64,000 nucleotides of DNA from Isurus oxyrinchus (lineage: Eukaryota): positions 4,588,001 through 4,652,000 of the forward strand of contig JANJGN010000041.1 of NCBI GenBank assembly GCA_026770705.1. Direction: 5' to 3'. Both the position numbers and the translations under genes were made by a program. Position 1 is the stretch's first letter; each line of letters begins with the position of its first letter. This document shows positions 2,758 to 34,582 of this stretch, in pieces. A model generated the notes under the pieces. That model was not told where the DNA came from and searched no databases. It was given only the letters and a program-made list of their open reading frames with translations.

Positions 2758-2793
2758 ATTATTAACTACTGAACAGTCAGTCAGTTCCTATAA
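2758..2793 (+). promoter_or_regulatory. promoter of defensin A: ATTATTAACTAC box + TATAA
   Basis: Box at 2758-2769, TATAA at 2789-2793, 19-nt spacer; the same arrangement occurs in copies C, D and E. Confidence 0.6.
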
Positions 2794-2843
2794 CGAGCAT
2801 CCGTACTCCTGTTATCGCATTGGCACTCTGAGGAGATCAAATG

Positions 2844-3857
2844 ACGTAGAAATCTCTGTTTTTGTGCTTGGATTAATGGCCATGGCAGGGCCGCTTTACA
2901 GCCACAATCATTATACTACCCGAGGTCAGTGTATTTCACATTAATCGCTATAGATCAATATTGAATGGAAAAGGAGGTGTCCATTCAGCCCCTGAAGCCT
3001 GTATCTCTGATCAGTTGACAATTGGCTGATGTGCACTGACCATCATCGCTCCAATTTATTTCCATAACCATTAAAACACTTATCAAATGTAAACCTATCA
3101 ATTTCGGTTTTGGATCAATTCAACTAAAATGTATTGATGGCATTTTATTTATTGTAGGTTTGTCCAGTCTCCATCAACATCATGCAATAATCTGCCTGTA
3201 ACCCCCTCATGTGTCTCATTCACATGCTGTCCCTCAGCGATTTATTACATTCACTCTATACCATGCTGTCAACACGCACCTTATTCACCATCGTATGATA
3301 TTGTCTTGTCTGACAACCTTGCAAGATAAGTGGGCACCACAATTCTGCCTGATTCTGTATGCCCTGATATCAGTCGTTTCCTCATTGACGGCTGTGTCTT
3401 CTGTGGCTGGGGACAGATTCTTCAGCATTCCACTAAAACCCCCATGATTATTTTTCTCTATGGAAATTATTTTTCCTTATGCTACTGCTGAATCGCTCGC
3501 TTATCTCTAGATTTTGAATGCACGATACGAGTTGTTTCCATTTTCGCTGTGCACAGGCAGGGTAACTGTATCTCTTGCTTTGACCTCTCTTTGAGCACAG
3601 TGCCCAGAAGTAATCTACAAATCCCTCGGGTAGACCACAGTAAGAACACTGTTCACTATTCTGGTATCAATGTTCCACTGTTCGTCCACACTTGGAACAA
3701 TGATGGTCATCAATGAATTGTTCCTTTCACTTCGCCGGGCCTCACCATAGAACGTGACCTGATTGGAGGGAGACACGGACTTGACAACTGTAAGGCTGTC
3801 AGGACCCGCGTCGGACAATGTTGTTGTCTGACATTCGACTGCTACAAGAGTAAGTGA
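2844..3857 (+). pseudogene. beta-defensin-like pseudogene A (exon 1 2844-2924, exon 2 3739-3857)
   Basis: Exon 1 reads ACG TAG AAA TCT CTG TTT TTG -TG CTT GGA..., i.e. [M][W]KSLFL-VLGLMAMAGPLYSHNHYTTRG, with start ATG>ACG, TGG>TAG and a 1-nt deletion; phase-1 donor G|GTCAGT at 2925. Exon 2 follows a mutated acceptor (CAG>CGG, 3736-3738) and reads GLTIE[R]DLIGGR[H]GLDNCKAVRTRVGQCCCLTFDC[Y]KSK*. This fits canonical C-x6-C-x4-C-x9-C-x6-CC spacing with C1=CGT, C2=CAC, C6=TAC. Confidence 0.8.
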
Positions 3858-6016
3858 GTTACTACAACTAAATGTTTATCATTTGAGAGTTGCCTGAGGC
3901 CTTGTCTGAAGCTCACTGTAATTTCTGCAATTCATGATCTGCCAAATTGCTTAGATCTGATGACCCATTGCTCCCTGTTTCCTAAAAACTGTGAAGAAAA
4001 CACAGTGCCTTGCACAATGCTTCTTGTCCAGCAATAAAGTCTCACTTGGATCGGTGTGTTGCCATATTGACAGGTTTGGACGGGAGGTCAGAAAATGGCA
4101 GGGCGGCAGTGACATCATGCAGCGGCAATATAGTCATCTGTGCAGAACACAAAACTTCCAAACAATGCCAGAGGAATGTTTTCCACCATCACTGATATGC
4201 CTTCTGATACTATGATACTAGCAGGAAAGATACTCTAGGGATGATAATAAAGTGGCTAACAGCCAAGACGGGATGACATTGAAAGGCCCCAACATTGACT
4301 ATAGGCACTACAGTGTCTCAAACAGCATCAGGACAAACACGGAAGATTCCTGCTTCATCCCATCTCCCATTCTCTGTAAGCAGATGAATATTTAGGTCCC
4401 CACCCTCCATCACATTTTAGACACGACTTGAAAGAAAACATGGCTGCGAAAAATGCACCCTGAATGTCAGTCTTGAATGGCAATTTTCAAGTATGACACC
4501 GAACACCAGTACAGACGAGTTAGGCCAGGACTAAAAGGATAGACTGTAATGGTTCTAGAAGGCAGCTCATGATGAACTACTTCAAAAATATGCCCAGAAA
4601 TGTGTAAGTGGTTGATGTATCTCGGCCTCATCCTGAGTCGTCCAATATCACAGGTATCAAAATTTAGCCATTTTATTTCACAATGGTGTCATTGAATGAG
4701 ACAAATTGAATGCACACAACCTCCGTGCAGTAGGACTGAAGACGTGAATTGCCCCTCAGACAGACAGTCTTTTCAATTTGAAGAGCAGCATGCTGATCAC
4801 ACTGTCTTAAAGGGTGTCACACGGGATTGTTTGTTTCACACATTCTCTCAAACAGAGTCCACGCACCACCAACTTCTGCCCTTCCCAAATGCCTCCAAAC
4901 CAGCTTTGGAGAATATCATGCAAGAGTTGGAGTGATTAACAGTTTAGTGATCAATGTTTGAACGTCGCCATGTGTACTCATTATAAGACCTAGATGACCT
5001 TGAAATGGAAATTACACATGGAGCTTCCAGGAGAGACGGATGAAAACTCTGAAATTGGCCAGGAAATCCCTCAGAAAGGATGGCAGCAGCCCAGAGATAA
5101 ATATGCAGCAAGGTTATCCTCATAAATATTTAGCCATCTGGGCAGATGGATATGAAGTTTGAAAGAGACAAGGAGATATAGCACAGGAGAAGGTTGGAGA
5201 AGCAATGAGAAAATGAGTAGCCGAACAGGGGGCTGTAATGCAATCCGGTTTTCAGAAAGAGGAATGGTGATAATAGGGAAAATATCTACTTTCAAACAGG
5301 GAGCTTTTAGTGTCTGGAATGAACTGACTGAGAGTTAGCAGCAGACAGATTCCATCGTCGCTTTTTGAAGGAGATTCAATCACTATCTAGAAAGGAAAGA
5401 TGTACAGGGCCACGGTGAATTCGGGTGGTTAGAGCCTCGGTGAGAGTCCCTCGCTGAGTGGCAGCTCAGTGACGAAGGACAATGTTTACCTTCTGCTCGG
5501 GAATCATTGGATGATTCTATGGGGGAGAGGATGAGTGTGAAATGGGGCAAGAGAAAATAATCGTGACACAGTCACGGCAAAAATAACAACAGGTTTAGAA
5601 AGGTTAAGGCTGCGGGAGAAATGGATTCAGACAGAGAAAAACAGAAAAGGACAATTGAGTGAGAGAGAGTTTGATAACAGTTCAAGGTAAATGCGATTTT
5701 TCATTTACTGAATGAAACACAAATGCACAACACGATATAACAGTTTTCTTCAGAAATGTGCAAAAACAGCAGGATCAGCACCAAAAATAAAGGAAAATAC
5801 CTTAGGTAGCTTATACTTTAAGTTATGAAACATGATCGTTCACTTAATACTTGTAATGAAAACCAGGAATATAAATAAACAAACAAATATAAAAGCAAAA
5901 ATATGAATACAGCATAATTAAATAAGTAAATAAATGGGTACATGAATAAAAATATGACTAAATCAAAATAAATAAATATAGATTGATTCCTTAATACGTA
6001 AATATAAAGGTAGGTA

Positions 6017-7270
6017 NNNNNNNNNNNNNNNNNNNNNNNNNNNNNNNNNNNNNNNNNNNNNNNNNNNNNNNNNNNNNNNNNNNNNNNNNNNNNNNNNNNN
6101 NNNNNNNNNNNNNNNNNNNNNNNNNNNNNNNNNNNNNNNNNNNNNNNNNNNNNNNNNNNNNNNNNNNNNNNNNNNNNNNNNNNNNNNNNNNNNNNNNNNN
6201 NNNNNNNNNNNNNNNNNNNNNNNNNNNNNNNNNNNNNNNNNNTGGAAATCCAAAACAAGAACAGAATTATAGTTCAACAGTTCTGTTGAAGGGTCGTGAG
6301 GACTCATAACGTCAAATGTATTCTTCTCCACCGATGCTGCCAGACCTGCTGAGTTTTTCCAGGTCATTCTGTTTTTGTTGTAGATAGATANNNNNNNNNN
6401 NNNNNNNNNNNNNNNNNNNNNNNNNNNNNNNNNNNNNNNNNNNNNNNNNNNNNNNNNNNNNNNNNNNNNNNNNNNNNNNNNNNNNNNNNNNNNNNNNNNN
6501 NNNNNNNNNNNNNNNNNNNNNNNNNNNNNNNNNNNNNNNNNNNNNNNNNNNNNNNNNNNNNNNNNNNNNNNNNNNNNNNNNNNNNNNNNNNNNNNNNNNN
6601 NNNNNNNNNNNNNNNNNNNNNNNNNNNNNNNNNNNNNNNNNNNNNNNNNNNNNNNNNNNNNNNNNNNNNNNNNNNNNNNNNNNNNNNTGGAAATCCAAAA
6701 CAAGAACAGAATTACACTTCAACAGTTCTGTTGAAGGGTCGTGAGGACTCATAACGTCAAATGTTTTCTTCTCCACCGATGCTGCCAGACCTGCTGAGTT
6801 TTTCCAGGTCATTCTGTTTTTGTTGTAGANNNNNNNNNNNNNNNNNNNNNNNNNNNNNNNNNNNNNNNNNNNNNNNNNNNNNNNNNNNNNNNNNNNNNNN
6901 NNNNNNNNNNNNNNNNNNNNNNNNNNNNNNNNNNNNNNNNNNNNNNNNNNNNNNNNNNNNNNNNNNNNNNNNNNNNNNNNNNNNNNNNNNNNNNNNATAG
7001 ATAGATAGTTATATAGATAGATGGAATGCTATATAGATAGATAGATGGAATGCTATATAGATAGATAGATTGATAGCTAGATAGATACATAGGATAGACA
7101 GACAGGCAGNNNNNNNNNNNNNNNNNNNNNNNNNNNNNNNNNNNNNNNNNNNNNNNNNNNNNNNNNNNNNNNNNNNNNNNNNNNNNNNNNNNNNNNNNNN
7201 NNNNNNNNNNNNNNNNNNNNNNNNNNNNNNNNNNNNNNNNNNNNNATAGATATATGGATAGGTAGATAGA
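6017..7270. other. N-runs (6017-6242, 6391-6687, 6830-6996, 7110-7245) within a (GATA)n-rich region; another at 9009-9185
   Basis: Ns abut tagatagata tracts, so they are gaps or masked microsatellites. Confidence 0.85.
6243..6829 (+). mobile_element. two near-identical Penelope-type pLTR fragments with a short inverted 5' segment, separated by Ns
   Basis: 6243-6390 and 6688-6829; the leading aaaacaagaacagaat is an inverted repeat of the distal attctgtttttgttg. Confidence 0.65.
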
Positions 7271-7721: not shown

Positions 7722-8931
7722 TCAGTTCAATCTTCCATAATGGCTACAGCAGAGGGTCATGAAGCCCAATTCACTTCTTCTGAACTCTCTATCGCATTTA
7801 TCAGTGACAAAATTACACTGATGAGCCCTCGATTTGGCTAGACAAAATCAAGGGGAAACATCTTCCCTACACCCACACAATCAAAAGCTTCTATGGCATG
7901 TACAACAACAGCCACTTTTATTTAAAGGCGCCATTATCCTTCTGAAGCATTCCATGGTGCCTCACATTATTCTCCTCAAAGCGATATCGCCATCGGCCGA
8001 TAGGGGGAGACACTGGAACGGACGACAATGTATTTCTTAAACGTCATAGGGTTGAAGGAGCGTCTTACAGGATGAACAAGAGATGGAACAATATAGGGTA
8101 GGGGTGTGTTGGAATTCAAGCGCTTGGGGCCCAAGCATAGAAAGGCAGAGCCGCTAAAGTTAGGATACATTGTTATGGAGGCTTGTAAGTGCGAGACCAG
8201 TAAGGTTCGGGTTCGAATAGACAAGTCCGGATTTAAAGCATGTCTGGTGGAGTGTTTCAATAGGCACGCGGTGTTACGTAGGTCGAACAGTATGGATTAC
8301 ATAGATTATGTGGCATGAATCACAACTTGTGCTCCAATATGACAACAAGTTAGTGAAAGGTTCCACCATTGATATTCGCCAAGGGCTGAGAGATTTTAGT
8401 GATATTTATTTAAGGCAAATATTTCCACATCCATTGTTGGTTGGTGGATAAGCAGTCCGGCAACTGAGAGACAGTGGAACAGTTGATAGGTGTAATAGTG
8501 AGCTAGGGCTTAGCGCCATACTTGTGAACAATAACACTGTGTTATTGACTGATGTCCCCGAGGGGCACCACAAATGGAGGTGGGGGGAGTACCGTAATTG
8601 AAGTGCAGGGCAAAGCGGGAGACTGTGAGATATTCAAAATAATGCACTGTTGAATATTTTACAATTACACAGCCGTGAGGTTGTGGCGTCTTTTGATGAA
8701 AAGATGTTCAAAGTCCAGAAACAAAGTGGGTAAACGTTGCTGAGGTGCAGGTTAAAAAACTGCAGTTCTATGTTGGAAGAGCCCCGGCGTTCCAGTTCCT
8801 ATCTATAGCGCTATGTGTTGGATACTGAGAGATATACTGAAGTGCCAATTCTGAGGGTACACTGAACATCCGACAGTAAATGGCTGTATCAGCACCAAGA
8901 CACCAAATACCAAGAGCAGCCTTTTCACCGT
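7722..8931 (-). pseudogene. beta-defensin-like pseudogene B (exon 1 8931-8842, exon 2 7837-7722)
   Basis: Exon 1 reads [ACG]VKRLLLVFGVLVLIQPFTVGCSVYPQNWH, homologous to the other exon 1s; the donor position reads TTCAGT (GT lost). Exon 2 follows a good acceptor (tttccccttgattttgtctag) and reads AKSRAHQCNFVTDKCDRE[F]RRSELGFMTLCCSHYGRLN* (C-x6-C-x3-[TTC]...CC). At 116 nt it is the same length as exon 2 of copy C. Confidence 0.72.
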
Positions 8932-10149
8932 TTTCTGCTGAGTTCCTCAGAGTCACTATGAGACGATTGGAATATGGAACAATTTCGATTGGCTCAGGAA
9001 GCATCTTGNNNNNNNNNNNNNNNNNNNNNNNNNNNNNNNNNNNNNNNNNNNNNNNNNNNNNNNNNNNNNNNNNNNNNNNNNNNNNNNNNNNNNNNNNNNN
9101 NNNNNNNNNNNNNNNNNNNNNNNNNNNNNNNNNNNNNNNNNNNNNNNNNNNNNNNNNNNNNNNNNNNNNNNNNNNNNNNNNNNNNGGATTGTTTACATCT
9201 TTGACGTATAAGAAGAGCCCAGGGATGGAGATCAAGAGTGACTTAATCAATGATTAAATGTGTTGCCAAAGCTGTTTTTTTTAATTAAAATCCATCAGTA
9301 AGTCATATTAATCATTCTCCTTGGGAGAATTTATAAGAATCACCGGTTGAAATTTAATAAATTAAAAACATGTAAAATTAAATCCTTGTTGCCTTCCACT
9401 TAGTTCATTTTCCAAATATCTTTATTGTGTTTTTACTGGTTACCTAACCTCCTACTCTCTAAGATAACCCACAGCGTCTGTGAGCTGAATACTTGGCTGG
9501 GACATTTATTTGTCCACCTGACATAACTGAACGAGGTGATCAGGTCATTACCTCTTCAGTGGGAGCTTTCTGTACACCGATTGGCTATCACACTTTCCAC
9601 ATTACATCATTGATGACACCTAAAGATTTTTTCGGGAAAACTTCCGGAAGTTCTGACGCTGCCAATTATGGTACAGAAATGCAATATTATTTTTTCTAAT
9701 TCTATTTGCACCTCTCCATCCATCTTCGTCCTAATACTCTCCCTCCTGCCTCCCTGAGATTATGTTAAGTTTCTCATTCTCTATCTCGCTCTGCTTCTCT
9801 AACTTATCATTTGCCTCTCCTTCTTCACCCATTCCATTCGCCATCTTCCATTCACTACCTCTCCGTTAAATATTTCTAAATATAAGTCGTTGGTGTATGG
9901 TTAAATATTTCCCTCTGAAACGGAAATGTCCTGTCACCAGGTGCAATCCTGTCTGACACCCTTTTTGCGAATAGAAAGGAATGAGCTGTACCTGAATATG
10001 AAGCAGCAGCTCACAGTCTGTCTGTGGAGACAGTACACAATCTCTTAACTAATGAGTTTTCAAATCCCATCACACTACTTTATTAAAACCTCTGCATTAT
10101 TCTAGGTTTAATGTTGTCTGGGTCGAAGTATCCACAGACAGAAGGAGAC

Positions 10150-12270: not shown

Positions 12271-12307
12271 ATTATTAACTACCGGATCCTTTATGAGCTT
12301 ATATAAA
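12271..12307 (+). promoter_or_regulatory. promoter of defensin C: HNF1-like box + TATA
   Basis: ATTATTAACTAC at 12271-12282 (reverse strand GTTAATAATCAC), TATAAA at 12302-12307, 19-nt spacer. Confidence 0.7.
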
Positions 12308-12359
12308 CAGCATCAGCACTCCAGCTATCACACTGCGTCTCTGAGGTGCTCAGCGGAAG

Positions 12360-14173
12360 ATTAAGACGGTGCTTTCTTGCTACTTGGAGTCCTGGTGATG
12401 ACGCATCCCATCACATCCCAGCAGCTCCATTTCCTTATGGATTTTATTGGTAAGTCTGTCTCTACGTAATCTACATTGTGAAATATTGTCAGGTGCAGGA
12501 GGAGGCCATTTCGCTCCTCATGGTATTTTCAAAATAAAAAGATATTTTTTTTTCAGATCGATACCTCAACTGCATTAGCGAACATTGATTCTGGAAACTT
12601 TAATGATGTTTCCTCATATAAAATATATCAAGGTGAATTTCGACTGATTGAATACTATTGAAATATGCTAATATTTGGATGTATGGGCATTATCTCCAAC
12701 TTTTTGCCATCTTCCAAAGATTCTTCCTTTCTCCCTGTCTGACTTCCCATCTGTTCACAGCCACCGCTAATATCATGTATAAACAAAGCATTGGCTTCCA
12801 TACATCCGCAGAGGAGCCTAACTTGCCAGCTTGTGGTGCAACCTCGCCGTTTCTTCAACATTAACAGGTGACTGATCGAAAACCCGTATCAGCAAAGTTT
12901 TCCACCAAATCGAATATATTTATACACCGTTTGGGACAATGACTTCAAGTCCCAAACCAAACTCCATTCCCTGGATACCAGCGCCAGCCCTGTTCTTGGA
13001 ACCTGTTTGAGGTGCAGACATAGTGAATTCAAAACACTGTTGTCCTGTTTCAAACACAGGCCTGTGTTATTGCAAAGGACTCTTCAATCCACCTCAGTAT
13101 CATCGCCCGACCCATCCTCTGTCTCAGCTCATCTGCAGCTGAAGTACTCATCGACACATTTGACACTTTTATACATGACTATCCCAATGCAATCCTGGCT
13201 GTTCGATCGCATTTTAATCACCATACCCTGAGGCCATTCCAAAGCACTGCTACCTTGGCAACCTAATTCACTTTGGCCCGCATTCATCAATCAAACCCTG
13301 AACTCACTGAATTATATTGGTTCCTCGTTACGCAATAACCAGATTTTAAAACGGTCATTCTTGTTCTCAAATACCCGGTTGGTCATTCCCGTTCTTGCTC
13401 TGGAATCTCCTCTAGGCACACAATTGCTGGAGATCTCTGTGCCCCTCTAGTTCGGGACTCTTGAGAATGCCTGCGTAATATCGCTGCAACATTGGCGGCT
13501 GTTAATTCAGGTGTCAGATACCTGAAAACTGGAATTCCTCCTAATTCCTATCCTGCTCCCTCTTCCTCCTTAATCCTTTCTCCGTAAATAAATGTTTTGG
13601 TCACCTCTCCAGTTCACTCCTCAGGCGGTTAGATGTATGATGCTGTTTGATAGAGCTCCTGTGAAGCAGTTTGGGATGCAATATTGGGTGATCTCAGTTC
13701 CTGTTGTTTTATAAGATACGGAAAGTTCTGCTTGGTAGATGGAGGGAATATACTGTGACTTGTGGTCGGTAGCAACAATCTACGAAACGCCAACATATAA
13801 AAGTCACTCATAAAAGCAAGAAATAACATAGTTGAAACCTTTTCACTCAGTAAGCAATGAATATGTGGAACTGGCCAGCACAGGGAGTGTTTGTGGTAAA
13901 TAGTGTAGATGTATTTAAGATGAAACTGGATAAGCATGTGATAGGGAAAGTATTTCTATGCAACATCACATTCATCATGTGAGTCTAACATCTTATTGCC
14001 TCACTGTTCTCCTACGCAGTCATACAGAGTGATTAATTTTCTGTTGCTACGTTTCAGGTCAATTATTCGGTTGCACAAAATATGGTGGGAAATGCCGAGA
14101 ATTGTTGTGGGGGCCACGCGAGCCTCTGCTACCTCAAATATGTCTCTGGAGTCGTCTCTGCTGCAGGAGTTAG
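12360..14173 (+). pseudogene. beta-defensin-like gene/pseudogene C (exon 1 12360-12449, exon 2 14058-14173)
   Basis: Exon 1 reads [ATT]KTVL-FLLLGVLVMTHPITSQQLHFLMDFIG (start ATG>ATT, 1-nt deletion). Canonical donor G|GTAAGT at 12450 and acceptor tttcag at 14057. Exon 2 is open: GQLFGCTKYGGKCRELL[W]GPREPLLPQICLWSRLCCRS* (5 of 6 Cys, C3=TGG). TATA at 12300-12307, AATAAA at 14298-14303. Confidence 0.88.
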
Positions 14174-14297
14174 TCATCTACCATAATGCATTAAGATGTG
14201 AACCCGTCTGAGGCTGAGGCAGAAGACAATATTTAATCAGGGTTCACTTGATAATAGAGGCCCCGCGATTCCAGACCCACTGCTGTATGGAAATGTG

Positions 14298-14303
14298 AAT
14301 AAA
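14298..14303 (+). terminator. polyadenylation signal of defensin C
   Basis: AATAAA about 125 nt after the stop codon; the homologous position is degenerate in copies A (AAGAAA) and D (AATAAC). Confidence 0.6.
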
Positions 14304-15049
14304 TGTTGCTGCATTCATCATCACCTTTATTCATGGTCTCATTTATCACTCTGATCAGCTGATGGTCATGTTGAAATGGAGAGGTTCGGGGAGAGCGGGG
14401 TGTGGGCCATCAGAGAATGGCAGGGTCACATTGTCATTTCATAGCTCCAACATAGCCTCACACACACAGAATATCACCCGTCTGCCAATTCCACAACGTT
14501 ACAGACCCCACATGCCTCGTATGGTCAGTTTCCCTGGGAGGGTGGAAGTAATTGAACACTGGCATTCAGGCCGGCGGAGAAGATCGGAGAGCCCTTAACA
14601 GTTAGTACAGATACCACCCTGCATCATGGCATCAGGACAAACATGATTTTGGGATCTCCATGTCAGTAATCACATTCTGTCCTCCTGATGCAGAGTGGCT
14701 CTGCCATTATAATTAGGGGTGAAAGCTAGCTGTGTGATATGTTAATGAGACACAGTATACATCATAACAGGAAGTGAGGCAACGTTTAATGATCTTGCAT
14801 TTTCTTTTCGACTTCATGGCAGGTAGAAGCTACAGTAAAGATATTTCTCAATTAAAACTTAATGTTTTGAATACATCAGTAGAAATTGTAAATATTCTGT
14901 GCAGTAATCACGATACCGTTTACATTATATGATGGCAGTGAGAGAACGGTCAAACACAGGAAGTCCTAGCAGGGGCAGAAAGCTAAGAGCAGGCGGTAAA
15001 TCTGAACCAGGCAGACACTTGGCTGAGTTGGCGCCTGTTTTTTGGCATA

Positions 15050-18590: not shown

Positions 18591-18804
18591 TTCGTGGTCG
18601 ATGTTGAATTAGTTGGTGGTTTCCAAATGTTGAGGCTGTTGAAGTTGTTAATGTTTTTCAATGTTGATGTTGTTGAATTTGTTGGTGTTTTTCAAATGTT
18701 GAGTTTGTTGAATTTGTTTGAGTTTATGTTTGGGTGTGTGTATGTGCGTGCATACATGAGTGGATCATTCTCTCAGTGTATGTTTGTGTGTATGTACGTG
18801 TACT

Positions 18805-21870: not shown

Positions 21871-21909
21871 AAAAATGTCATAGAGACATTAGCATAAACT
21901 TTATCATGC

Positions 21910-23722: not shown

Positions 23723-26071
23723 TGAGAGTCCAGCGGTGCATAACAAGCGGGCTGAAGAAAAGTCGAGGTGGAAAATGAGCAAGCACAAAAAATGCTTCCA
23801 GGGATGAGCAACTTCAGTTCCATGGATCGATTGAAGAATTTGGGACTGTTGTCCTCAGAGATGAGATGGTCGGGAGGAGAGCTGCTCAAAATCATGACAG
23901 TTCTGGGCCAGAGTGGATCAGGAAAAGCTGTTCACATTGGGGGAAGGATGAAGAATCAAAGGGGCACAGGTGGAAGAGTACAGACTGACCCCAAGTCCTT
24001 CACATCCTCCCAAACCAAACGTGTCAACTATTGACGTGTGCCTTATTGCATGTGTAATGCATAGTTTTCAATGAACCATAATTCAATTGAAAATTCATGT
24101 TTAATTTAGACTCATTTTGCATTGCAGGCTACCAATGGTAGCTACGTCAGTTTTTAGTGTTTCCTTAGCTTGATTCTTGTATGGGGCCAAACATCATTGG
24201 CTGAAAAAATATTTTTTGAAACTCCTGATCCCATTAAAGTCTCTTCAAATATGCAGAGCTTGCATTCATTATCTCTGCCTCGCTATCAGCCTGTGTCTTG
24301 ATACTTGCTGTTGGAGTGTGTCCTCAGTGCAAAGAGCGGACTTCACCTGCATTCATACTGAGAGGCGGTCACTCCTAATAAAACAGTTGTCATGGGCAGA
24401 TGAACGTGGGTTGGTGAGGATGATGCTAAGTAGGTTTTGTTGCCCCTGTCAGCAGGAGACACCAGCCCAAATTTTCGGGACTATCCTTTAAGAACAAAGT
24501 GCCTAGGAGCAGAAAACGGTCATTAGTTCCATCGATGAGATCATGGCTGACCTGATAATCCTGAAGACCATTTTCCCGGCCTTTCCCCCATAAAACTTGA
24601 TTCACTTACTGATTAAAAATCTATCTGTCTCAGCCTTGAATATTCTTATCCATCCAACCTCTACATGCCTCTGCGCTAAAGACTTCCACAGATTGAATAC
24701 CTTCCTCCTCATCTCTCTTTTACTCTGAGTTTATGCCCTCTGACCATAAACTCTCCCACAGGGCGATACAACCATCCTGGGCAATGCAGCCCACTTTAAT
24801 GGCACCACGTCTAAGAACATTCACTTCCTCCACCAGCGAGACACAGTAGCATCAATGTGTACCATCCAGAAGATGCACTGCAACAACTGCCAAAAGCTCC
24901 TTCGACAGAGTCGCACAAATCCTCACCCACTACCATCTAGAAGGACTAGGGCAGCAGCCTCATGGGAAATCCACCAGCTGGAAAATCCCTTGTGAGCAAC
25001 GCACTATCCTGGCTTGGAAATATACCGGCCATTCCTTCACCGCCCCGAATCAAAATCCTGGAACACCCTCCCTAACAGCACATTGAGTGCACCTACAGGA
25101 CAGCGACTGCGGCATTTCAAGAAGTTGGCTCATCACAACGTTCCCCAGAGGCAATTAGGAAAAGGCAATAATTGTCATCCCGGCCAGTGAAGCACATATC
25201 CTGTAAATAAATACAAATGACATCTACCATTTCAAGCACCATATGAAAGTTTTATCTTGCAATAAGACCGCCTTGAATTCTTCTAAACTGCAGTGAGTAC
25301 AGGTCCAACCTACTCAACCACTCCTCACAAGAAAATCCCTCCATCCTCAGGATTAGCCAAGTGTACATTCTCTGGACAACCTCCAATGCCACTATATCTT
25401 ACCTTAGATAAGGGGGGCAAAACAGTTCACCGTTTTCCACGACTCAGTCAGCTCACTCAATGGTGGTGCTAACAATCCTGTCTTCATGCTAGGCATTGAT
25501 AGCATTGACCCAGATTGCTCTCAGTAATCCTGCTCCCCCGAGTGCTTCTTCCAGCTGTGCATCAGTGTGGTATATTCATTCATCAGCTGAGGTGGGACCA
25601 GGAGGCGTTAGCATGCTGGTGCCACCAATTGCCATATACGCCCTGTTGCTATGTGGTATTGGGATCCAGGAGGACTGTTTAGGGTGTCCAGGACCACATA
25701 CCTGCTGGATGTGGTGGATCTTTCGTGTGGATGGGGGACAAAGGCGGTGATGAATGAGCCTGGGATGTAGAGCGGAATTAAATCACAGCATTGTTGAATC
25801 CACCAGTTGGAAAGCAGACTCTGTTGCTCCCTGTTCCCCACTCTCCCCACCATCCTCTCCGGCCTTGCCTATATGGCAGCACATGCCAGTTCACCCGAGA
25901 AATGAGACATGGACAGGAGGCGGTGAGCAATGCAATGAGACGTTATTCACATGGTTCAGTAAAGCGGTGGGATCGGGTTCAAGGGGATTCTCCGCGTCTG
26001 AATGAAACAGCAATCAAGATTAGCTTCTGTCGGAGCCTCGGACATAGGTGCATCCTCCATGGCCTTGGGCC

Positions 26072-27683
26072 TCATTTAGACATGCATCAGTGAAAGTCTC
26101 TGGCGCACTTGTTAGCAATCTCGTCTGATCGCTTTTGCAGGGGCTCGATTTCCAATACCCAACATGTATGCATCCGAATGCGAGGGCTGGAAAAAAGCAG
26201 GGAAAATCTCATAAGTCATTGTTTGTGGTTCAGGGGTGGTCGTGTTGTGGGGGGATGGGTAGTTCTGGGGTTGGTAGAGAGAGTGAGCATCGAGTCACCT
26301 CCATTAAAAAGTATGAGGATGAAAGTTGGCAGCTACATAACATTCAAGGTATGTGTGAAGTGTTAGTAAATGGAATTAGGTAGGTAAGGAAAGTTGTTTC
26401 TCAAGTGTCGATGCAGACTCGATGGGCTAAAAGATCTCTTCCACACCGTGTGATCATATGATAAAGAAGGTAGTTCTGTCTGTCACTCACGGGAGGGTGG
26501 TGGACCACATGGTCTTACACGGAATCTCATGTCTCCCGCTTTTCTTTAGTCAATAGTTCCTTTCAACGTGTTGACACTATTCACCTCAACCCTTCCCCTC
26601 TTATAGAAATTCCCACGTCATCACCTCTCTTGTGTGCTGATGTTTATCCTGATTTACCTATTCGATCGCCTTTTGCATCTCTTATCCTGCTGGACACCTA
26701 GATATGGCTCACGGCAACAGGTGGGAACATCTTCCTACATCTACCCTATCGAATTATCCATGTGTCACACAACAAAAACACGAATTATTCATATCTCTGT
26801 GACCGAGGGTAGACCCCCAGCAAGCTTCAGAGGAGTGTTATCAAATTGCATCAATCATCAACTCACAAGGGATACACTGGGGGAGTGACCAATTGCTAGG
26901 TCCATGGTAGGATTTTATTGAGCGACTGAAAGTTGGAGAGACGGCGTGGAAGATGTGGAGAGGTTTTGTGAATGAATTCTGGGGTTCGATTCCCAGGCGG
27001 GTGGAGACAGGGCCACGAATGTAGCATGGAATGAAATGGGTGAATGTCCAGGGGCCGGAAATGGGGTAATGGAGAGATCTTGGAGGCTGGATGGTTGGAG
27101 GGAATTACAGGGATAGGGAGGGGGCAAGATACTGGAGGGATTTGAAAACCAGAAACTGACGTCAGAAATAGATAGACCGGTTGTTTAAAGGGGATCAGAA
27201 GTAAACTTCCGGGCACAAGGTGATCAGTGAGTGTTAGGACTTAGGCAGCAGAGTTTTGTGTGCCTTCACTTTATGTAAGGTGGAATGTGGGAGAAACAGC
27301 CAGAGTTATATTGGCATAGGGAACTCAAGAATAACCAATGTTTATATGAAGATTTCACTGTCAGGTCCGATGAGACAAGGTCACTGTTGGGTGATGTTTC
27401 CGTAGTGGATATAGGTAGTCTTTGAGGTGGCAAGGATATATGGCAGGTATCACATTTTGGGATCAAATCCACACAAGTCTCTGTCTCGCAGACTTCCCAG
27501 GGACAGGGATGAAGTAAGCAGAGAGGGAACATTTGTAAGTCCAGGGCTGAAAACAATGGTGTGAATCAAAGAGTTCTCAGAGACACACTCAACTCCGCTA
27601 CCATCAGGCAGGGCTCTTGCTTGGGCAGTGGTGGTCTGCACCAGTAGCAGGCCACCAAGAACCAATAGCAGTGCTTTCATCAT
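26072..27683 (-). pseudogene. beta-defensin-like pseudogene D (exon 1 27683-27593, exon 2 26186-26072)
   Basis: Exon 1 has an intact signal peptide, MMKALLLVLGGLLLVQTTTAQARALPDGSG; the homologous donor is mutated (G|TTGAGT). Strong acceptor ttttccctgcttttttccag. Exon 2 reads ALAFGCIHVGY[W]KSSPCKSDQ/fs/EIANKCARDFH[*]CMSK*, with a 1-nt deletion near 26120 and C5=TGA at 26089-26087. Confidence 0.85.
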
Positions 27684-27735
27684 CGTCTGCCAATCTCCTC
27701 CCAGTCACAATGAGATGATCGGAGTAAGGGTGGTA

Positions 27736-27772
27736 TTTATACAAATTAAGAAAAAAAATTGTAGTTAATAAT
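27736..27772 (-). promoter_or_regulatory. promoter of defensin D: HNF1-like box + TATA
   Basis: ATTATTAACTAC at 27772-27761, TATAAA at 27741-27736, 19-nt spacer. Confidence 0.7.
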
Positions 27773-29914: not shown

Positions 29915-30338
29915 TAGCACATGATGTAAACTAGGTGTAAGGGGTCTCTAAGGCCGAGGAGTAACAGTGACTTAGCAGCAACATTGTTGAACGAATTTGC
30001 TGAGTCCTGATGGATATATCAAACGGGCTGGAAGGGAAGGAAGGTTCCTGTCCTTCCATTAACTCGAAAGCATGATTGAGACTTCCTACATTTCCATTCC
30101 CTTCGACTCTTGGAGACCTTCTTTAGCTTGGAACTGACTATCTTCCCCCTTTTAGGCTTTTCACACTGGCAACTATCTTGAAAACTTGCTGAATTCCAAC
30201 AGCCTCCAAAACTAACTAGTTTTTTTGTTTTTATCTCTGTGTTTAATTGACTGCCACTGCTCTTCAAGAAATGCCTACCTCCTTGAAGAAGTTCTGTTCC
30301 TCTCTGCGACAAGATTTCCATATCTCTACTCGAAATCA

Positions 30339-30475
30339 AGTTCTGTCGAAGGGTCATGAGGACTCGAAACGTCAACTCTTTTCTTCTCCGCTGATGCTGC
30401 CAGACCTGCTGAGTTTTTCCATGTAATTCTGTTTTTGTTTTGGATTTCCAGCATCCGCAGTTTTTTGTTTTTATC
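30339..30475 (+). mobile_element. Penelope-type pLTR fragment with minimal hammerhead-like motif
   Basis: AGTT CTGTCGA A GGGTC atgag GACTC GAAA CG TC AACT followed by gatgctgccagacctgctgagtttttcc... Confidence 0.7.
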
Positions 30476-32699
30476 CAAAACTAACCTGCTGTTCCTAGCT
30501 TTTGCGTGCGTTTCTGAGAGAGGACCTGCCTTTCTAAGCCCCCATGAGCAGGCAATAGCCAAAAACCTCCATTTTATACCACTTCCATCTCTCAGTGGCA
30601 GGCGGTGAGAGAAGCAACAACAGGGGTTAACTTGCTTGCCCCTGTCCTCACTGATCTACCCTGGAGCAGATGAATTTGTCTATGGCGGATATCAGCAGGA
30701 CTAACTGGCACAAACTCTTTGTAGGGGCACAGTGCAGTCTTCACTACGATGACACCTTCCATCGTGATGTCTGTCACTCTCAACTGTGTCCGGCAGCGCA
30801 AATACAGGCATCCTTGGGGCACTGTGGGGCATCTGCTGCAGAGGCAGGATTGAGCACAAAGGTAATCTGTAATCTGATGTCCTGGCACAAACTTCACTCT
30901 CCCACTGAGCTGTGTGTTTACAGACAAATCATGCAAGGTAGCGGTACAGGGAAATAGAACGCAAGCAATTTCTCATGGGCAGTTCGGAGTAGTCAAGAAA
31001 TGTTCACATCGCAGGTGGGGCACATTTTCGAAGAATGGAGAGGTGAAGGATATGGAAGAGGGTGGAATGCCTGTTGGGGTTCACCGTGCACCAATTTTGG
31101 ATACCATTTTGCCAACCTTCCAAAGTGTAGTGCTGGTGTCGGGCTGCTTATCAGCCTGTTAAACATTTGCCTTGATCACAGAACTGACTGGTCATCAGTA
31201 GCTGTACCGTATGACAGCCTTGGACAAGGGCACCAGGATCTCGAAAACGATTCGCCCCGGCACAAGGCCCCAGCTGCTTCCCTGCCGTCTGTGTGCAAAA
31301 TGCACAGGCTGGAATTCCACAAGGTTGTGAAAAATGTGTGATCTGAATCCAGGGGCACACCATTGCCCGGGGAACTTAATACCTTTGGGCCACAGAAATC
31401 TGTCAATTCTACAGTTAAATATTAGAAATAGATCTCGCACCTGTTGCTTTTGAAAGAAAGGAGTTACTAATGTGTATCACCCCTTGTGTATGGCAGTGTT
31501 GTACAGAGCAGCCTGACTAGGCCCTTTGGACTCTGTCACATAGCCTGAGTGTCGTCAACCAGTGAATATAATTTTTCTTTATCAGCCTTATATGTTCCAC
31601 TTAACACCTTAAATACTTCAACCCAACCACTCTGGAACGTTCCAAATTCCAGGGAGTACATGGATTATTTTTGTAATCTCTGCCAGTCTATTTTCCCTTG
31701 CCGCCCAGGTATCATTTCTGGTAAACGTGCCCAGCATTCCCTTCACGCCTGACAACTCACATTAGGGAAAATTGTCAATAGTTGATTCGTCTCCATCTCC
31801 CTATTTCTCTCTCTCCCTCTCTCTATCTCATTCCATTCTTAAGCAAGAGAGTGGCTTTCAGAATTACGCAGCCTCAACAAATAATTCTAGTATGGATGGA
31901 AATCCGGGAAATTATAGACTGGACATCCGCAATTTATCAGCTGTTTCCTTCAATCGCTGGCATGAAAACTATCTGACCCTGTGTTTTCGGCATCCAAATG
32001 TCCCATTATTTTCTCCACGTCCATTATGTTGTTAATTCTAGGTCTTTATGAGCATTATCTTTCAAAAAAATCAGGCTATATGTTATCTTCACTGGAAGGG
32101 CCAGAACATCTCTGCAAACCTTCGTGATTCTCAACCAATTGTAAGAATGCTTCCCTCCAACATAGCGATCTTAGCTAGTGCCCTAGTCTGACCATTCTCG
32201 ACCAATAGAGAGAGAGAGTTTGACTTTCCTACAACAATATAGCCTTAACTTGTGCCAGTTCCTAACAATTCTAGCTCTCAGTCCACAATTCTCGCCATCG
32301 GCATCCAGTTTTGGCTTGTGGTGAATGAGAACTCTGGACCCTCCGGAGCCAAAGGTCAAAATGCTTCCCAGCTCCAACTCAGTTCCATTCTGTGCTGCCT
32401 TTTCTCCTTAAAGCTAATTTACAACACTTTGTCATTTATAGAGCTGCCAACTATAGGTCAACTTAACAACATTCCAAAAGTGGATAGGAATTGCGATCTT
32501 ACGTTCCTCAGCTGATACGAAGCACCGTTCGTAACCTGAGCCTGGACAAATAGCGCAATACGTCAATGCATTGACGGACCAGAAGGTTGGAAACTCAGGT
32601 ATGCCTGCTGCTGGTTTTGAAATCGTCTCCTGCAGTCTGGAACTGCGTTTGTAATTGGGAAACATTTTGCTTTTGATCTTTGGAGATTCTAGAATTATC

Positions 32700-33600
32700 A
32701 TTCAACAGATGCCAAAACTGAATGCCAATTGGCTAAAAGGGTAGACTGAGGTGTAGAATTGTAAGGAACGTGCACAATTTAAGGCTAGATTGTTGCAGAA
32801 AAAATCAGATGTTCTCATTCCATTGTCCGAGAACCATGCTTGATTCCTTGTTTTAAAGGTCATGGTAGGATGAAGAGTATGCCGGGCCATGATCTTGCAG
32901 ATTATGTCTGAATTTAATTTTGCTGCTGCTGATGTCCCAAAGGGCCTCATGGATATTGAGATTTGAGCTGCGTGAAATGTTTTGAATCTATCCCATTTAC
33001 AGTAATGCACGTAGCACAACACACTGAAGTGTCTCCCCAGTTTGAAGACAGAGGTCTATTGTCACAAGGAGTGTGCGGTGGCCATGCCTACCAGCACCTT
33101 CAGAGACAGATGCATCTGCAGCAAGTACATTGGTGATGATGAGGTCAAGTACAATATTCCCTCTGGTTGGTTCACCTGTCTCAGGTCTATTTTGCCTATC
33201 GCGGCTCATCCACCTGGGTCTGTTGTGGTGACCAAGAGCCACTCTTGGTGATGGGCATGCAGGTCCCCCAGTAGAGAACATTCTGTGCCCATGATACGCT
33301 CAGTGTTTCTTCCATAAGGTGTTTCGAATTGATCAGATTCTGCAGAGTGATAAGTGGGAATCAGCAGCACGTTCTCATTCCCGTGTTAGCCCTCATGCTT
33401 TGTCACATAATAGAGACTGTATTTAATGCTGAGCCCTCCCAATGGGAACCCATACCTATTGTATTTCCCTGTGCCGCCATCCTGGTACCTTCCTCCTATC
33501 AGCGGGGCATCACAAACATAAGAATATGGGTGGCAAACCATTGCCATTGGCTGTGAAGTTCTGATTCTGATAGCATGACAATTCAGGAGCTACAAGATCC
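32700..33600 (-). mobile_element. LINE endonuclease-region fragment
   Basis: EPTRGNIVLDLIITN in ORF 32997..33281 is an APE endonuclease motif. Confidence 0.7.
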
Positions 33601-33896
33601 CAATGAGAAAATGCCGTGTTCTACACGTATGGCTAAATTGGAGCTGAAAAATGACAATATGACTCTTGCATTTTCTAACCTCTCCTCTCTGCCTGCTGGT
33701 CGATATGGTGACACAGCGATCCGAGTGAGAAATTACACATGGAGAAGAGGCGGTAATCAATGCAGCCATTTTTATGCAAATGATTCAAAAAGCAGCGTGG
33801 AAGGGGTCATTGGAACCATGCAATGAAAAAAAGAAATTAAAGTCAATCTCAGCCAAACCCACAGGTTGACCTGGCAGTACGATATATTCACTTTTG

Positions 33897-34493
33897 TCAA
33901 CCCCATTCAGCCTCACAACACTTAAAAATGAATCAGCACTTCCAGCGCATTAAGGCCTCTTCGTCATTGCATCCTCCCATTCTACTTGCCACTGCTTCAT
34001 CGCGAAATGGAACGGGTAGAGTGAGAAATTGGTGGGACGCAGGTATCTGGAAGATTTTTTGGGCTCGAGGAGATTACAGAGTGTCGGAGGTTCGTGATAA
34101 TGTTGGGATTTAGAAACGATTAATACAAAATATCACCGATGGACAGCATGTGGATGGGAAATTCGAGGAGAATGAGGATAGCTCTTCGGCGGATAATAGG
34201 TGAGGTTGGATTACAAAAAAAAAAACACCCAATTTTTGAAGAAGGCTAAAATAGAGACCGACAGCTTCATCTTTGGAAAGGTTTATAATGATAATGGAAC
34301 AAAAATTGTCCAATGGGCTTAAGACACATATCAGCAAAGAGCAAATTGAAATATAAAACTGGCTTGAGGGGCTGAATGGCCTCCTCCTGTGGTAATGACT
34401 GCTTCTGAGAGATAACCTCCGTGGATAACAACCGATAAGCATGGACTCCACCACCATCAGCAATCCAAGTACCAAGAGCAGTGCTTTCCACAT
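33897..34493 (-). pseudogene. beta-defensin-like pseudogene E (exon 1 34493-34417, exon 2 about 34000-33897)
   Basis: Exon 1 reads MWKALLLVLGLLMVVESMLIGCYPR with an eroded donor (GTTATC). The exon 2 remnant reads DEAVASRMGGCNDEEALMRWKC*FIFKCCEAEWG* (C-x10-C-x5-CC, internal TGA, N-terminal Cys segment lost). Its 3' flank 33700-33830 aligns by eye to the polyA region of copies C and D. Confidence 0.75.
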
Positions 34494-34545
34494 CTTCCCC
34501 TTAGCTCCCCAAAGTCACAGTTGGATGAGTGGTGTACACATGATC

Positions 34546-34582
34546 TTTATATCAACTGAGAGAGAATTATTTCGCTAATAAT
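34546..34582 (-). promoter_or_regulatory. promoter of defensin E: degenerate box + TATA
   Basis: ATTATTAGCGAA at 34582-34571, TATAAA at 34551-34546, 19-nt spacer. Confidence 0.6.

What the first reader, a model, noticed from the sequence alone, without database searches (positions are those of the whole stretch)
2758..34582. Hidden cluster of five two-exon beta-defensin-like genes in a probable shark genome, all damaged
Seen: five homologous signal-peptide exons (77-91 nt; KxLLLVLG-type), each paired with a 104-119 nt exon whose Cys or near-Cys codons follow beta-defensin spacing. Copy A fits C-x6-C-x4-C-x9-C-x6-CC exactly, with GG and G-x-C motifs; C has CTKYGGKC...CLWSRLCC; D has C...CARDFH*C; E has C-x10-C-x5-CC. 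Established: this six-Cys spacing and a signal-exon/mature-exon layout characterise vertebrate beta-defensins, which evolve by birth-and-death. Inference: this is a chondrichthyan beta-defensin locus that automated annotation would miss. To my knowledge the family is thinly described in cartilaginous fishes, and the two-exon layout resembles mammalian genes rather than the three-exon teleost genes. Functional members may lie upstream of the window or in related species.
Basis: partly seen in the sequence, partly recalled or inferred. Interest (0 to 1): 0.88.

Follow-up and report, generated by a model that had tools for sequence, protein, structure and literature searches.

The report
Dead shark beta-defensin-like gene cluster
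Five decayed copies of a small two-exon gene for a secreted, cysteine-rich peptide that looks like a beta-defensin lie together in a shark genome; none can still make the peptide, so they are relics pointing to a family that still needs a live member to be proven.

Summary
The repeated unit is real. Five homologous promoter, 5'UTR and signal-peptide exon units lie at the stated places (A +, B -, C +, D -, E -). Four of them (A, C, D, E) are followed 0.4-1.6 kb downstream by a short last exon and a homologous 3' block with a poly(A) signal. No second exon was found for B, which borders assembly gaps.

Copy C's second exon is an open 37-codon frame reading C-x6-C-x4-W-x10-C-x5-CC. That is five of the six beta-defensin cysteines at canonical spacing, behind an intron that I read as phase 1. 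D and E keep parts of the framework. A fits only if Arg, His and Tyr codons are counted as former Cys.

The beta-defensin reading rests on four things: framework, gene layout, clustering, and a protein-language-model lead for C only. It was not confirmed by Pfam, phmmer (1.84 billion representatives; PDB), word-indexed protein searches or a fold search. No transcript was seen in four runs, and no intact relative could be reached.

The window is from a shark or ray, shown by a neighbouring GPR139-like gene. First readers of this scan noted 11 similar clusters or genes (8 were listed) within about 3.4 Mb on the same piece; the 8 listed had no follow-up.

Verdict: probable beta-defensin-like pseudogene cluster; moderate interest.

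The parts
2758..2924 (+). Copy A: promoter box ATTATTAACTAC (2758-2769), TATA-like TATAAC (2789-2794, 19 nt after the box), 5'UTR and signal-exon remnant 2841-2924. The remnant has an in-frame TAG at the third codon and a 1-nt gap relative to the other copies. A GT donor follows at 2925.
3751..3857 (+). Copy A second exon (107 nt after acceptor ...CACCATAG). It is an open frame, RDLIGGRHGLDNCKAVRTRVGQCCCLTFDCYKSK*, with 5 Cys, of which only 3 sit at framework places in either register.
   Evidence: not recognised by ESM Atlas
3917..4240 (+). Copy A homologous 3' block, with AATAAA at 4033-4038
8715..9008 (-). Copy B exon-1 unit, cut at its 5' side by the gap 9009-9185. The signal-exon remnant is 8931-8842, with ACG at the start-codon place, no TATA, and TT instead of GT at the family's donor place. 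No second exon or 3' block was found.
12271..12449 (+). Copy C: box (12271-12282), TATA (12300-12308), and signal-exon remnant 12360-12449 with ATT at the start-codon place and a 1-nt gap. A consensus donor G|GTAAGT lies at 12450. The intron is phase 1 in the family frame.
14058..14173 (+). Copy C second exon (116 nt after acceptor ...GTTTCAG). It is an open frame, QLFGCTKYGGKCRELLWGPREPLLPQICLWSRLCCRS*, that is C-x6-C-x4-W-x10-C-x5-CC, with net charge +4. It holds 5 of 6 framework Cys, with TGG at the third place.
   Evidence: ESM Atlas lead
14224..14520 (+). Copy C homologous 3' block, with AATAAA at 14298-14303
27602..27772 (-). Copy D: box (27772-27761), TATA (27741-27733), and an intact signal exon from ATG 27683 (MMKALLLVLGGLLLVQTTTAQARALPD). 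The donor is ambiguous. A GT at 27601 gives phase 1. The GT next to the family's aligned place (27593) gives phase 0.
26072..26186 (-). Copy D second exon (115 nt after acceptor ...TTTTTTCCAG). It reads LAFGCIHVGYWK, then a 2-nt remnant where the second Cys codon is expected (frameshift), then EPLQKRSDEIANKCARDFH*CMSK*, with TGA at the fifth Cys place. Three framework Cys codons are left.
25832..26026 (-). Copy D homologous 3' block. The poly(A) signal place reads AATAAC (25947-25942).
34417..34582 (-). Copy E: a variant box ATTATTAGCGAA (34582-34571), TATA (34551-34542), and an intact signal exon from ATG 34493 (MWKALLLVLGLLMVVESMLIGCYPR). The donor GTTATC at 34416 is weak and gives phase 2.
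33897..34007 (-). Copy E second-exon region, reading FRDEAVASRMGGCNDEEALMRWKC*FIFKCCEAEWG*. It has four Cys as C-x10-C-x5-CC, an in-frame TGA just after the second Cys, and an acidic N-half. The family's acceptor place reads CAT; other AGs lie at 33992 and 33982.
33551..33850 (-). Copy E homologous 3' block. The poly(A) signal place reads CATAAA (within 33777-33769).
6017..7245 (.). Four assembly gaps (6017-6242, 6391-6687, 6830-6996, 7110-7245) within repeated sequence between copy A's 3' end and the region downstream of copy B. They could hide B's 3' part.
9009..9185 (.). Assembly gap directly upstream of copy B's exon-1 unit. It hides the place of B's promoter box.

Best explanation
This is a birth-and-death relic cluster of a shark family of small secreted peptide genes, best read as beta-defensin-like.

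Each unit has, or had, five parts:
- a TATA promoter with a conserved 12-nt AT-rich box exactly 19 nt upstream of it;
- a first exon carrying a short 5'UTR and a signal peptide of the M-x-K-A-L-L-L-V-L-G type;
- one intron of 0.4-1.6 kb, which I read as phase 1 in C, D and A;
- a last exon of about 110 nt encoding a short linker and a six-cysteine domain (C-x6/7-C-x4-C-x8-10-C-x5/6-CC) plus the stop;
- a short 3'UTR with a poly(A) signal.

A live member would be secreted, folded by three disulfides and act as a cationic host-defence peptide. That last step is inferred from the family resemblance and is not shown.

The five copies are old duplicates. Pairwise identity is 61% in the promoter and 5'UTR, 54% in the signal-coding part, 55% in the 3' block and about 40% in the mature-peptide exon. 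This uneven divergence suggests the copies were under selection after duplication, conserving the leader and diversifying the mature peptide, before each died on its own. The lesions differ between copies:
- A: early stop, 1-nt gap, lost Cys codons.
- B: start codon, TATA and donor lost; no second exon found.
- C: start codon lost, 1-nt gap, TGG at the third Cys place.
- D: frameshift in the second Cys codon, TGA at the fifth.
- E: in-frame TGA, weak splice sites, lost N-terminal Cys codons.

None can produce a six-cysteine peptide.
For: - Five exon-1 units and four 3' blocks, and no more, are found by profile search. Pairwise blastn between copies is independent of those profiles.
- The box-to-TATA spacing is 19 nt in all four copies where it can be read.
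- The codons of the fourth Cys and of the CC doublet align in all four second exons.
- C's stop-free five-Cys pattern is expected 0.01 times per shuffled window.
- C and E are two of only three placements out of 511,264 with all six framework places Cys or one step from Cys and at least 4 true Cys.
- The reading frames of C's donor and acceptor agree in phase 1. D's acceptor and one of its two donors, and A's acceptor, agree too. A phase-1 intron just 5' of the cysteine domain is the feature shared by big defensins and beta-defensins (PMC7203481, section 9 read).
- For C's exon-2 peptide, the three best ESM Atlas clusters are beta-defensin families: PF00711 at 0.85 with 183 shared features and at 0.82, and PF13841 at 0.77. 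Ten of the ten best share the clan, and recognition is 2964.
- C's peptide has net charge +4.
- Divergence differs by segment.
- The window is from a shark or ray.
Against: - Pfam hmmscan of C's exon-2 peptide and of the D and E signal exons gave 0 families at E<=10.
- phmmer of C's exon 2 against 1.84 billion representatives gave 2 hits at E 5e-4. Both are long repeat proteins and I judge them spurious.
- phmmer against PDB sequences gave 0 hits at E<=10.
- The word-indexed protein search gave no candidate for C's exon-2 frame. For D's exon-1 frame it gave 39 candidates, none at E<=10.
- The AlphaFold2 model of C's peptide is poor (pLDDT 63.2) and Foldseek found nothing at E<=0.001.
- A's exon-2 peptide is not recognised by the ESM Atlas: recognition 1185, no defensin among the best hits.
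- The second exons are not significantly alike pairwise.
- No contig of four putative RNA runs (three samples) lies on C's exons, and there is no joint. The splice model therefore has no RNA support.
- By the Atlas tool's own figures, a score of 0.85 is a lead only, and a third of shuffled proteins also get ten of ten hits in one clan.
Confidence: 0.65

Rival explanations
1. The units are relics of a shark-specific family of small secreted cysteine-rich peptides that is not homologous to beta-defensins. The C-terminal C-x5-CC and the C-x6-C would then be convergent. Its function could be anything a small disulfide-rich secreted peptide does, such as hormone-like, protease-inhibitor-like or liver-expressed antimicrobial.
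For: No profile, sequence or fold search links any copy to beta-defensins. Only one copy (C) shows most of the framework. The promoter box resembles a half-site of a liver-type factor; that consensus is recalled and was not tested. This would be unusual for epithelial beta-defensins.
Against: C's spacing matches the beta-defensin framework at every loop. The intron phase and position match (PMC7203481). The ESM Atlas places C among beta-defensin clusters only. The eight-Cys, three-exon hepcidin layout and the four-Cys LEAP2 pattern (both recalled) do not fit.
Confidence: 0.2
2. The five units are copies of a repeated non-genic element, such as a dispersed repeat or a segmental duplication carrying a TATA-like stretch. 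The second-exon cysteine patterns would then be chance products of reading six frames with 'near-Cys' licence.
For: The second exons are not significantly alike. C-x5/6-CC occurs 23 times in the window's six frames. A chance placement with 4 Cys and 2 near-Cys exists at 49308. A's fit is forced. No transcript was seen.
Against: - The unit occurs only five times in 64 kb and is not a dispersed repeat.
- It has the ordered anatomy of a gene: box, TATA at fixed spacing, ATG with a signal-peptide-like frame intact in D and E, a GT donor, a polypyrimidine-AG acceptor, an in-phase open frame, a stop, and AATAAA within a homologous block.
- C's full pattern is expected 0.01 times per shuffled window and sits exactly where the model predicts.
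Confidence: 0.07
3. One or more copies are still live genes making an altered product. For example, D's uninterrupted frame after splicing would give a four-Cys peptide, and C could be translated from a downstream start. The cluster would then not be wholly dead.
For: D has an intact promoter, ATG and signal peptide. From its acceptor, its second exon stays open for 54 codons in the phase-1 frame. C has consensus splice sites, AATAAA and an open second exon.
Against: D's open frame has no defensin framework and runs past the family's stop place. D's poly(A) signal place reads AATAAC. C has no ATG at the family's start-codon place, and its exon-1 frame is broken. No contig of four runs lies on C's exons.
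Confidence: 0.08

Closest known systems
Mammalian beta-defensin genes (two exons; Pfam Defensin_beta PF00711 and Defensin_beta_2 PF13841)
   Same: They share a signal peptide in exon 1, a single intron, and the whole six-Cys domain plus stop in exon 2. They also share tandem clusters with pseudogenes, a conserved leader with a fast-diverging mature exon (the mammalian pattern is recalled), and the framework C-x6-C-x4-C-x9/10-C-x5/6-CC, seen 5 of 6 in copy C. The two-exon layout of mammals is stated in PMC8231796 (passages read).
   Different: No copy here has all six Cys or passes the Pfam models. The introns are short (0.4-1.6 kb). A conserved AT-rich box sits 19 nt upstream of TATA. No expression or activity is shown.
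Teleost beta-defensins
   Same: Both are fish host-defence peptides with six Cys and a cationic mature peptide of about 40 residues (PMC8231796, passages read).
   Different: Teleost genes have three exons and two introns, with the mature peptide split over exons 2 and 3 (PMC8231796). Here the cysteine domain and the stop lie in one exon (copy C).
Big defensins of invertebrates and amphioxus
   Same: Both have a phase-1 intron directly 5' of the C-terminal six-Cys, beta-defensin-like domain (PMC7203481, section 9 read).
   Different: Big defensins carry an N-terminal hydrophobic domain and a linker. Here exon 1 encodes only a signal peptide and a few further residues.
Hepcidin and LEAP2 (liver-expressed cysteine-rich peptides)
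   Same: All are small secreted cysteine-rich peptides. A liver-type promoter element is possible here (the consensus is recalled). Follow-up notes of this scan report expressed hepcidin genes in this genome (not tested here).
   Different: Hepcidin has eight Cys and three exons, and LEAP2 has four Cys (both recalled). Neither pattern fits copy C's C-x6-C...C-x5-CC.

Membership tests
Vertebrate beta-defensin | Six cysteines spaced C-x4-8-C-x3-5-C-x9-13-C-x4-7-CC in the mature peptide (the ranges are recalled) | tested here: inconclusive
   No copy has all six. C has 5 of 6 at C-x6-C-x4-[W]-x10-C-x5-CC. E has 4 (C-x10-C-x5-CC with a TGA inside). D has 3 plus a frameshifted and a TGA place. A has 3 at framework places. 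B has none. This is consistent with a six-Cys ancestor but is not shown.
Vertebrate beta-defensin | Match to Pfam Defensin_beta (PF00711) or Defensin_beta_2 (PF13841) | tested here: not met
   hmmscan of C's exon-2 peptide gave 0 families at E<=10. The peptide lacks one Cys and is only 37 residues, so this failure is weak evidence against membership.
Vertebrate beta-defensin | Signal peptide on a separate first exon, with a phase-1 intron just 5' of the cysteine-rich domain | tested here: met
   This is read from the sequence. In C, the donor G|GTAAGT and the acceptor CAG|GT agree in phase 1. D's acceptor and its upstream donor are phase 1, and so is A's acceptor. E fits phase 2 only. There is no RNA support. 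The criterion comes from PMC7203481, section 9.
Vertebrate beta-defensin | Tandem multigene cluster evolving by birth and death | tested here: met
   Five units lie in 32 kb in both orientations, with different lesions in each. Unchecked first-reader notes list further clusters within about 3.4 Mb.
Vertebrate beta-defensin | Three-stranded antiparallel beta-sheet fold with C1-C5, C2-C4, C3-C6 disulfides | tested here: inconclusive
   The single-sequence AlphaFold2 model of C's peptide has pLDDT 63.2 and shows a beta-hairpin only. Foldseek against PDB found no match at E<=0.001. Disulfides cannot be tested here.
Vertebrate beta-defensin | Detectable sequence relatives among known beta-defensins | tested here: not met
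   phmmer against 1.84 billion representatives gave only 2 spurious hits. PDB gave 0. The word-indexed searches were blank. The ESM Atlas feature search is the only link (a lead).
Vertebrate beta-defensin | Expression, secretion and antimicrobial or chemotactic activity | not testable with these tools
   No contig of four runs lies on copy C's exons. Activity needs bench work on an intact member.
Vertebrate beta-defensin | Synteny with bony-vertebrate defensin loci | not testable with these tools
   The only neighbour in the window is a frameshifted GPR139-like GPCR.
Big defensin | N-terminal hydrophobic domain before the cysteine-rich domain | tested here: not met
   Exon 1 encodes 25-30 residues of signal peptide and linker only, and exon 2 starts 5 residues before the first Cys.
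Hepcidin | Eight-Cys mature peptide and a three-exon gene (recalled) | tested here: not met
   The genes have two exons, and C's pattern C-x6-C-x15-C-x5-CC holds five Cys.

The most novel reading that the evidence does not exclude
Sharks may carry a large, so far unannotated and undescribed family of two-exon beta-defensin genes spread over several megabases of one chromosome. The genes would be driven by a conserved box-plus-TATA promoter of liver or gut type. If so, the two-exon layout with a phase-1 intron would be ancestral for jawed vertebrates and the teleost three-exon layout derived. That would close the gap between invertebrate big defensins and bony-vertebrate beta-defensins. This window would be one of the family's graveyards.
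Probability: 0.45. Interest if true: 0.65.

Novelty: new member of a known kind. Interest (0 to 1): 0.42.

Why it matters
Beta-defensins are the most widespread vertebrate host-defence peptides, yet the reviews I could read name none for cartilaginous fishes. PMC6795676, section 14 (read), lists only transferrin, squalamine and kenojeinin.

A confirmed shark family would place the origin of the vertebrate beta-defensin gene layout before the split of cartilaginous and bony vertebrates. It would also add a pool of natural peptides from animals with slow-evolving genomes.

This window alone adds little to function, because all five copies are dead. It does give three useful things:
- a clean profile of the conserved leader unit (box, TATA, 5'UTR, signal exon) with which live members can be fished from shark genomes that annotation pipelines seem to miss;
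- evidence for uneven divergence, with a conserved leader and a fast-changing mature exon;
- a warning that single-copy 'near-Cys' fits are not reliable.

Tried and rejected
1. Pfam on C's exon 2 and on the D and E signal exons: nothing.

I repeated it with the same open frame extended by 9 intron-encoded residues, given by reference; no candidate. D's exon-1 open frame, which reads on into the intron (77 aa), gave 39 candidates, none at E<=10. A signal-peptide-only match could not reach E<=10 in a database of that size, so this blank is weak.

3. phmmer against 1.84 billion representatives: two repeat proteins sharing a YGG..G.LLWGP-like motif, rejected as spurious.

4. PDB sequence search: blank.

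5. Structure: AlphaFold2 single sequence, low confidence. Foldseek rows all had E>7 and were unrelated proteins. Rejected as uninformative.

6. ESM Atlas on A's exon 2: not recognised.

7. Exact look-up of three window frames in the 15-billion collection: absent.

8. RNA. The look-up of sequencing runs on 25800-34700 found only DNA holders of one coded organism. Five runs guessed to be RNA hold 1-2% of the words. Read laying of four of them on copy C (12150-14600, likeness 80) placed only 35-74-nt pieces with 4 to 14 differing letters each (of the 66 records laid, 8 were 90-95% alike and 58 under 90%). All lay inside the intron; there was nothing on either exon and no joint. I chose C because its signals are best preserved.

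10. A search for B's second exon by profile and by framework scoring failed.

11. I considered and rejected hepcidin, LEAP2 and big defensin (see the membership test).

12. Literature: five full-text searches found no paper on chondrichthyan beta-defensins. Of the two papers holding both defensin and shark terms, I read passages found by term search of both and one full section (section 14) of PMC6795676. No supplementary file was opened. Subscription journals are mostly outside the library, so 'not in print' is not shown.

13. The spliced exon 1 + exon 2 product was never joined, typed or searched.

Full report
WHAT IS THERE

The window is elasmobranch DNA. A frameshifted class-A receptor gene at about 49.15-50.04 kb has 947 relatives at E<=0.001. 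Nearly all of the 120 listed are named GPR139-like from sharks, and one is from a skate. The best identity is 64-66%.

Within 2758-34582 there are exactly five homologous units of about 300 nt: A 2742-3059 (+), B 9008-8715 (-), C 12254-12594 (+), D 27789-27489 (-) and E 34599-34294 (-). A profile built from the five finds nothing else in the 64 kb below E 0.5. Pairwise blastn, which does not depend on that profile, links them at E down to 6e-8.

Each unit contains, in order:
- a 12-nt box, ATTATTAACTAC, identical in A, C and D, with three changes in E, and hidden by a gap in B;
- a TATA box exactly 19 nt further on, in A, C, D and E;
- a conserved 5'UTR;
- a start-codon place followed by a signal-peptide-like frame, intact in D (MMKALLLVLGGLLLVQTTTAQA...) and E (MWKALLLVLGLLMVV...);
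- a GT donor region.

A second homologous block of 200-300 nt, carrying AATAAA or a one-letter variant, lies 1.0-2.2 kb downstream of the unit in A, C, D and E. There is none for B.

Between intron and 3' block, each of these four copies has a polypyrimidine tract. It ends in an AG acceptor in A, C and D. At that place E reads CAT, with other AGs 13 and 23 nt further on. A frame of about 85-116 nt follows and ends in a stop at the same aligned place.

THE ASSEMBLY GAPS

I tested these first, as asked. The five N stretches lie outside the gene models of A, C, D and E.

Gap 9009-9185 begins 53 nt upstream of the first aligned base of B's unit. The profile match there starts at model position 30, so the place of B's promoter box is unread. 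Gaps 6017-7245 lie in repeated sequence where B's 3' part might be.

THE SECOND EXONS

Copy C is the clear case. After the acceptor GTTTCAG at 14051-14057, the frame QLFGCTKYGGKCRELLWGPREPLLPQICLWSRLCCRS* is open for 37 codons. It reads C-x6-C-x4-W-x10-C-x5-CC and has net charge +4.

A stop-free pattern of this kind is expected 0.01 times per shuffled window. Two are observed, one of them C. The other, at 48362 on the minus strand, lies next to the weaker N-terminal match of the receptor gene (48321-48521, plus strand).

I also scored all 511,264 placements of the framework in six frames. Only three have all six places occupied by Cys or by a codon one step from Cys, with at least four true Cys. 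They are C (5+1), E (4+2) and one chance hit at 49308.

MAFFT aligns the codon of the fourth Cys and the CC doublet in all four copies:
- A: TGT ... TGC TAC
- C: TGT ... TGC TGC
- D: TGC ... TGA TGC
- E: TGC ... TGT TGT

D reads LAFGCIHVGYWK. A 2-nt remnant follows where the second Cys codon is expected. Then comes EPLQKRSDEIANKCARDFH*CMSK*.

E reads ...RMGGCNDEEALMRWKC*FIFKCCEAEWG*.

A reads RDLIGGRHGLDNCKAVRTRVGQCCCLTFDCYKSK*. It matches the full framework only if Arg, His and Tyr codons are taken as former Cys. MAFFT prefers another register, and the ESM Atlas does not recognise the peptide.

The coding parts of the four second exons are not significantly alike pairwise. Between 114 and 388 of 1000 shuffles reach the observed scores. 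Their homology therefore rests on their position between homologous flanks and on the aligned Cys codons.

The cysteine framework is clear in one copy, partial in two and weak in one.

DAMAGE

- A: a TAG at the third codon, a 1-nt gap in the signal exon, and lost Cys codons.
- B: ACG at the start place, no TATA, TT at the donor place, and no second exon.
- C: ATT at the start place, a 1-nt gap in the signal exon, and TGG at the third Cys place.
- D: a frameshift in the second Cys codon, TGA at the fifth, an ambiguous donor, and AATAAC at the poly(A) place.
- E: an in-frame TGA, a weak donor, CAT at the family's acceptor place, and an acidic N-half without the first cysteines.

HOW IT WOULD WORK

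The anatomy is that of a small secreted-peptide gene. The steps are: TATA-driven transcription, a signal peptide on exon 1, one intron, then a last exon with a short linker and a disulfide-rich domain, and a short 3'UTR.

In C the donor (..ATT G|GTAAGT) and the acceptor (CAG|GT CAA..) agree in phase 1 once the 1-nt gap is allowed for. D's acceptor and its upstream donor, and A's acceptor, are also phase 1. E fits only phase 2.

A phase-1 intron directly 5' of the cysteine domain is the gene-structure mark that big defensins and beta-defensins share (PMC7203481, section 9 read). The whole cysteine domain and the stop sit in one exon. Mammalian genes are built like this, whereas teleost genes have three exons (PMC8231796, passages read).

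These steps are read from the sequence. Secretion, folding and antimicrobial action are inferred from the family resemblance only.

HISTORY

Mean pairwise identity between copies differs by segment:

| Segment | Mean pairwise identity |
|---|---|
| Box to start codon | 61% |
| Signal-coding part | 54% |
| Start of the intron | 50% |
| 3' block | 55% |
| Second-exon region | 40% |

The copies are therefore old. The uneven divergence, together with a 12-nt box kept letter-perfect in three copies at a fixed distance from TATA, suggests they were under selection after duplication and died separately. Their different lesions say the same. This is the birth-and-death picture.

IS IT A BETA-DEFENSIN?

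For:
- the framework in C and its parts in D and E;
- the intron phase and position;
- the two-exon layout;
- clustering;
- the cationic charge of C;
- the ESM Atlas result for C: the three best clusters are Defensin_beta (0.85 with 183 shared features, and 0.82) and Defensin_beta_2 (0.77); ten of the ten best share the clan; recognition is 2964. By the tool's own figures this is a lead, not proof.

Against, or blank:
- Pfam: 0 families.
- phmmer against 1.84 billion representatives: two spurious repeat proteins.
- PDB sequences: 0.
- Word-indexed searches: blank.
- Exact look-ups: absent.
- Structure: model pLDDT 63.2 and no Foldseek match.

A 37-residue peptide that lacks one Cys is a poor probe, so these blanks lower the membership claim only moderately.

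EXPRESSION

The only runs holding the D-E stretch are DNA runs of one coded organism. Five runs guessed to be RNA hold 1-2% of its words. Four of them (three samples) were laid on copy C at 80% likeness. They gave only short, diverged pieces inside the intron, nothing on either exon, and no joint. This neither shows silence nor supports the splice model.

CONTEXT FROM THE SCAN

First readers noted 11 beta-defensin-like genes or clusters on the same piece, of which 8 were listed. These lie between 3.4 Mb before and 2.1 Mb beyond this window, and some were called intact. The 8 listed had no follow-up. I could not read those places, so they are leads only. They are the obvious place to look for live members.

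Two further notes concern copy C and the promoter box in this window.

LITERATURE

Five full-text searches found no paper on beta-defensins of cartilaginous fishes. A 2019 review's section on antimicrobial peptides names only transferrin, squalamine and kenojeinin for sharks and skates (PMC6795676, section 14 read). The library lacks most subscription journals, and I opened no supplementary file, so absence from print is not shown.

VERDICT

The repeated gene-like unit is real and far beyond chance. It is most likely (about 0.65) a dead cluster of a shark beta-defensin-like family. The family assignment still needs an intact member that passes profile and fold tests. On its own this window is a set of pseudogenes.

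Noticed in passing
window 48321-50042 (+): A GPR139-like class-A GPCR gene is split by a frameshift near 49395 (parts 49153-49395 and 49395-50042), with a weaker N-terminal match at 48321-48521. It has 947 relatives at E<=0.001; nearly all of the 120 listed are named from sharks, one from a skate, best 64-66% identity. This points to a very large GPR139-like expansion in elasmobranchs. This copy is probably a pseudogene or carries an assembly slip.
   Followed up: partly
window 2758-2769, 12271-12282, 27772-27761, 34582-34571: The 12-nt box ATTATTAACTAC is letter-perfect in copies A, C and D, with 3 changes in E. It lies exactly 19 nt upstream of TATA in all four, although the surrounding promoter is only about 61% identical. 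It resembles a half-site of a liver-type homeodomain factor (recalled, not tested). It is the subject of another first-reader note.
   Followed up: partly
window 2973-2999 (+), 34387-34361 (-), about 12496-12520 (+): A 27-nt element about 50 nt into the intron is shared by copies A and E (3 mismatches) and is similar in C. It occurs nowhere else in the window (0 expected). It may be a conserved intronic element or a shared old insertion.
   Followed up: partly
window 6243-6830: The short read stretches between the assembly gaps are near-identical repeats about 445 nt apart (6284 and 6729). An ATAG microsatellite lies at 6997-7102. The gaps therefore sit in a tandem array.
   Followed up: partly
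window 26186-26023 (-): If copy D is spliced in phase 1, its second exon stays open for 54 codons in the unshifted frame. The frame has four Cys and runs past the family's usual stop. It may be a chance open frame or a neo-product; this was not tested.
   Followed up: no
window 10083-10576, 17907-18806, 20217-21358, 37472-41533: Long low-complexity or repeat-derived open frames (CT-rich, CA/TG-rich, and a GC-rich stretch at 18-22 kb with GC 0.50-0.55) lie between the gene copies. I looked at none of them further.
   Followed up: no
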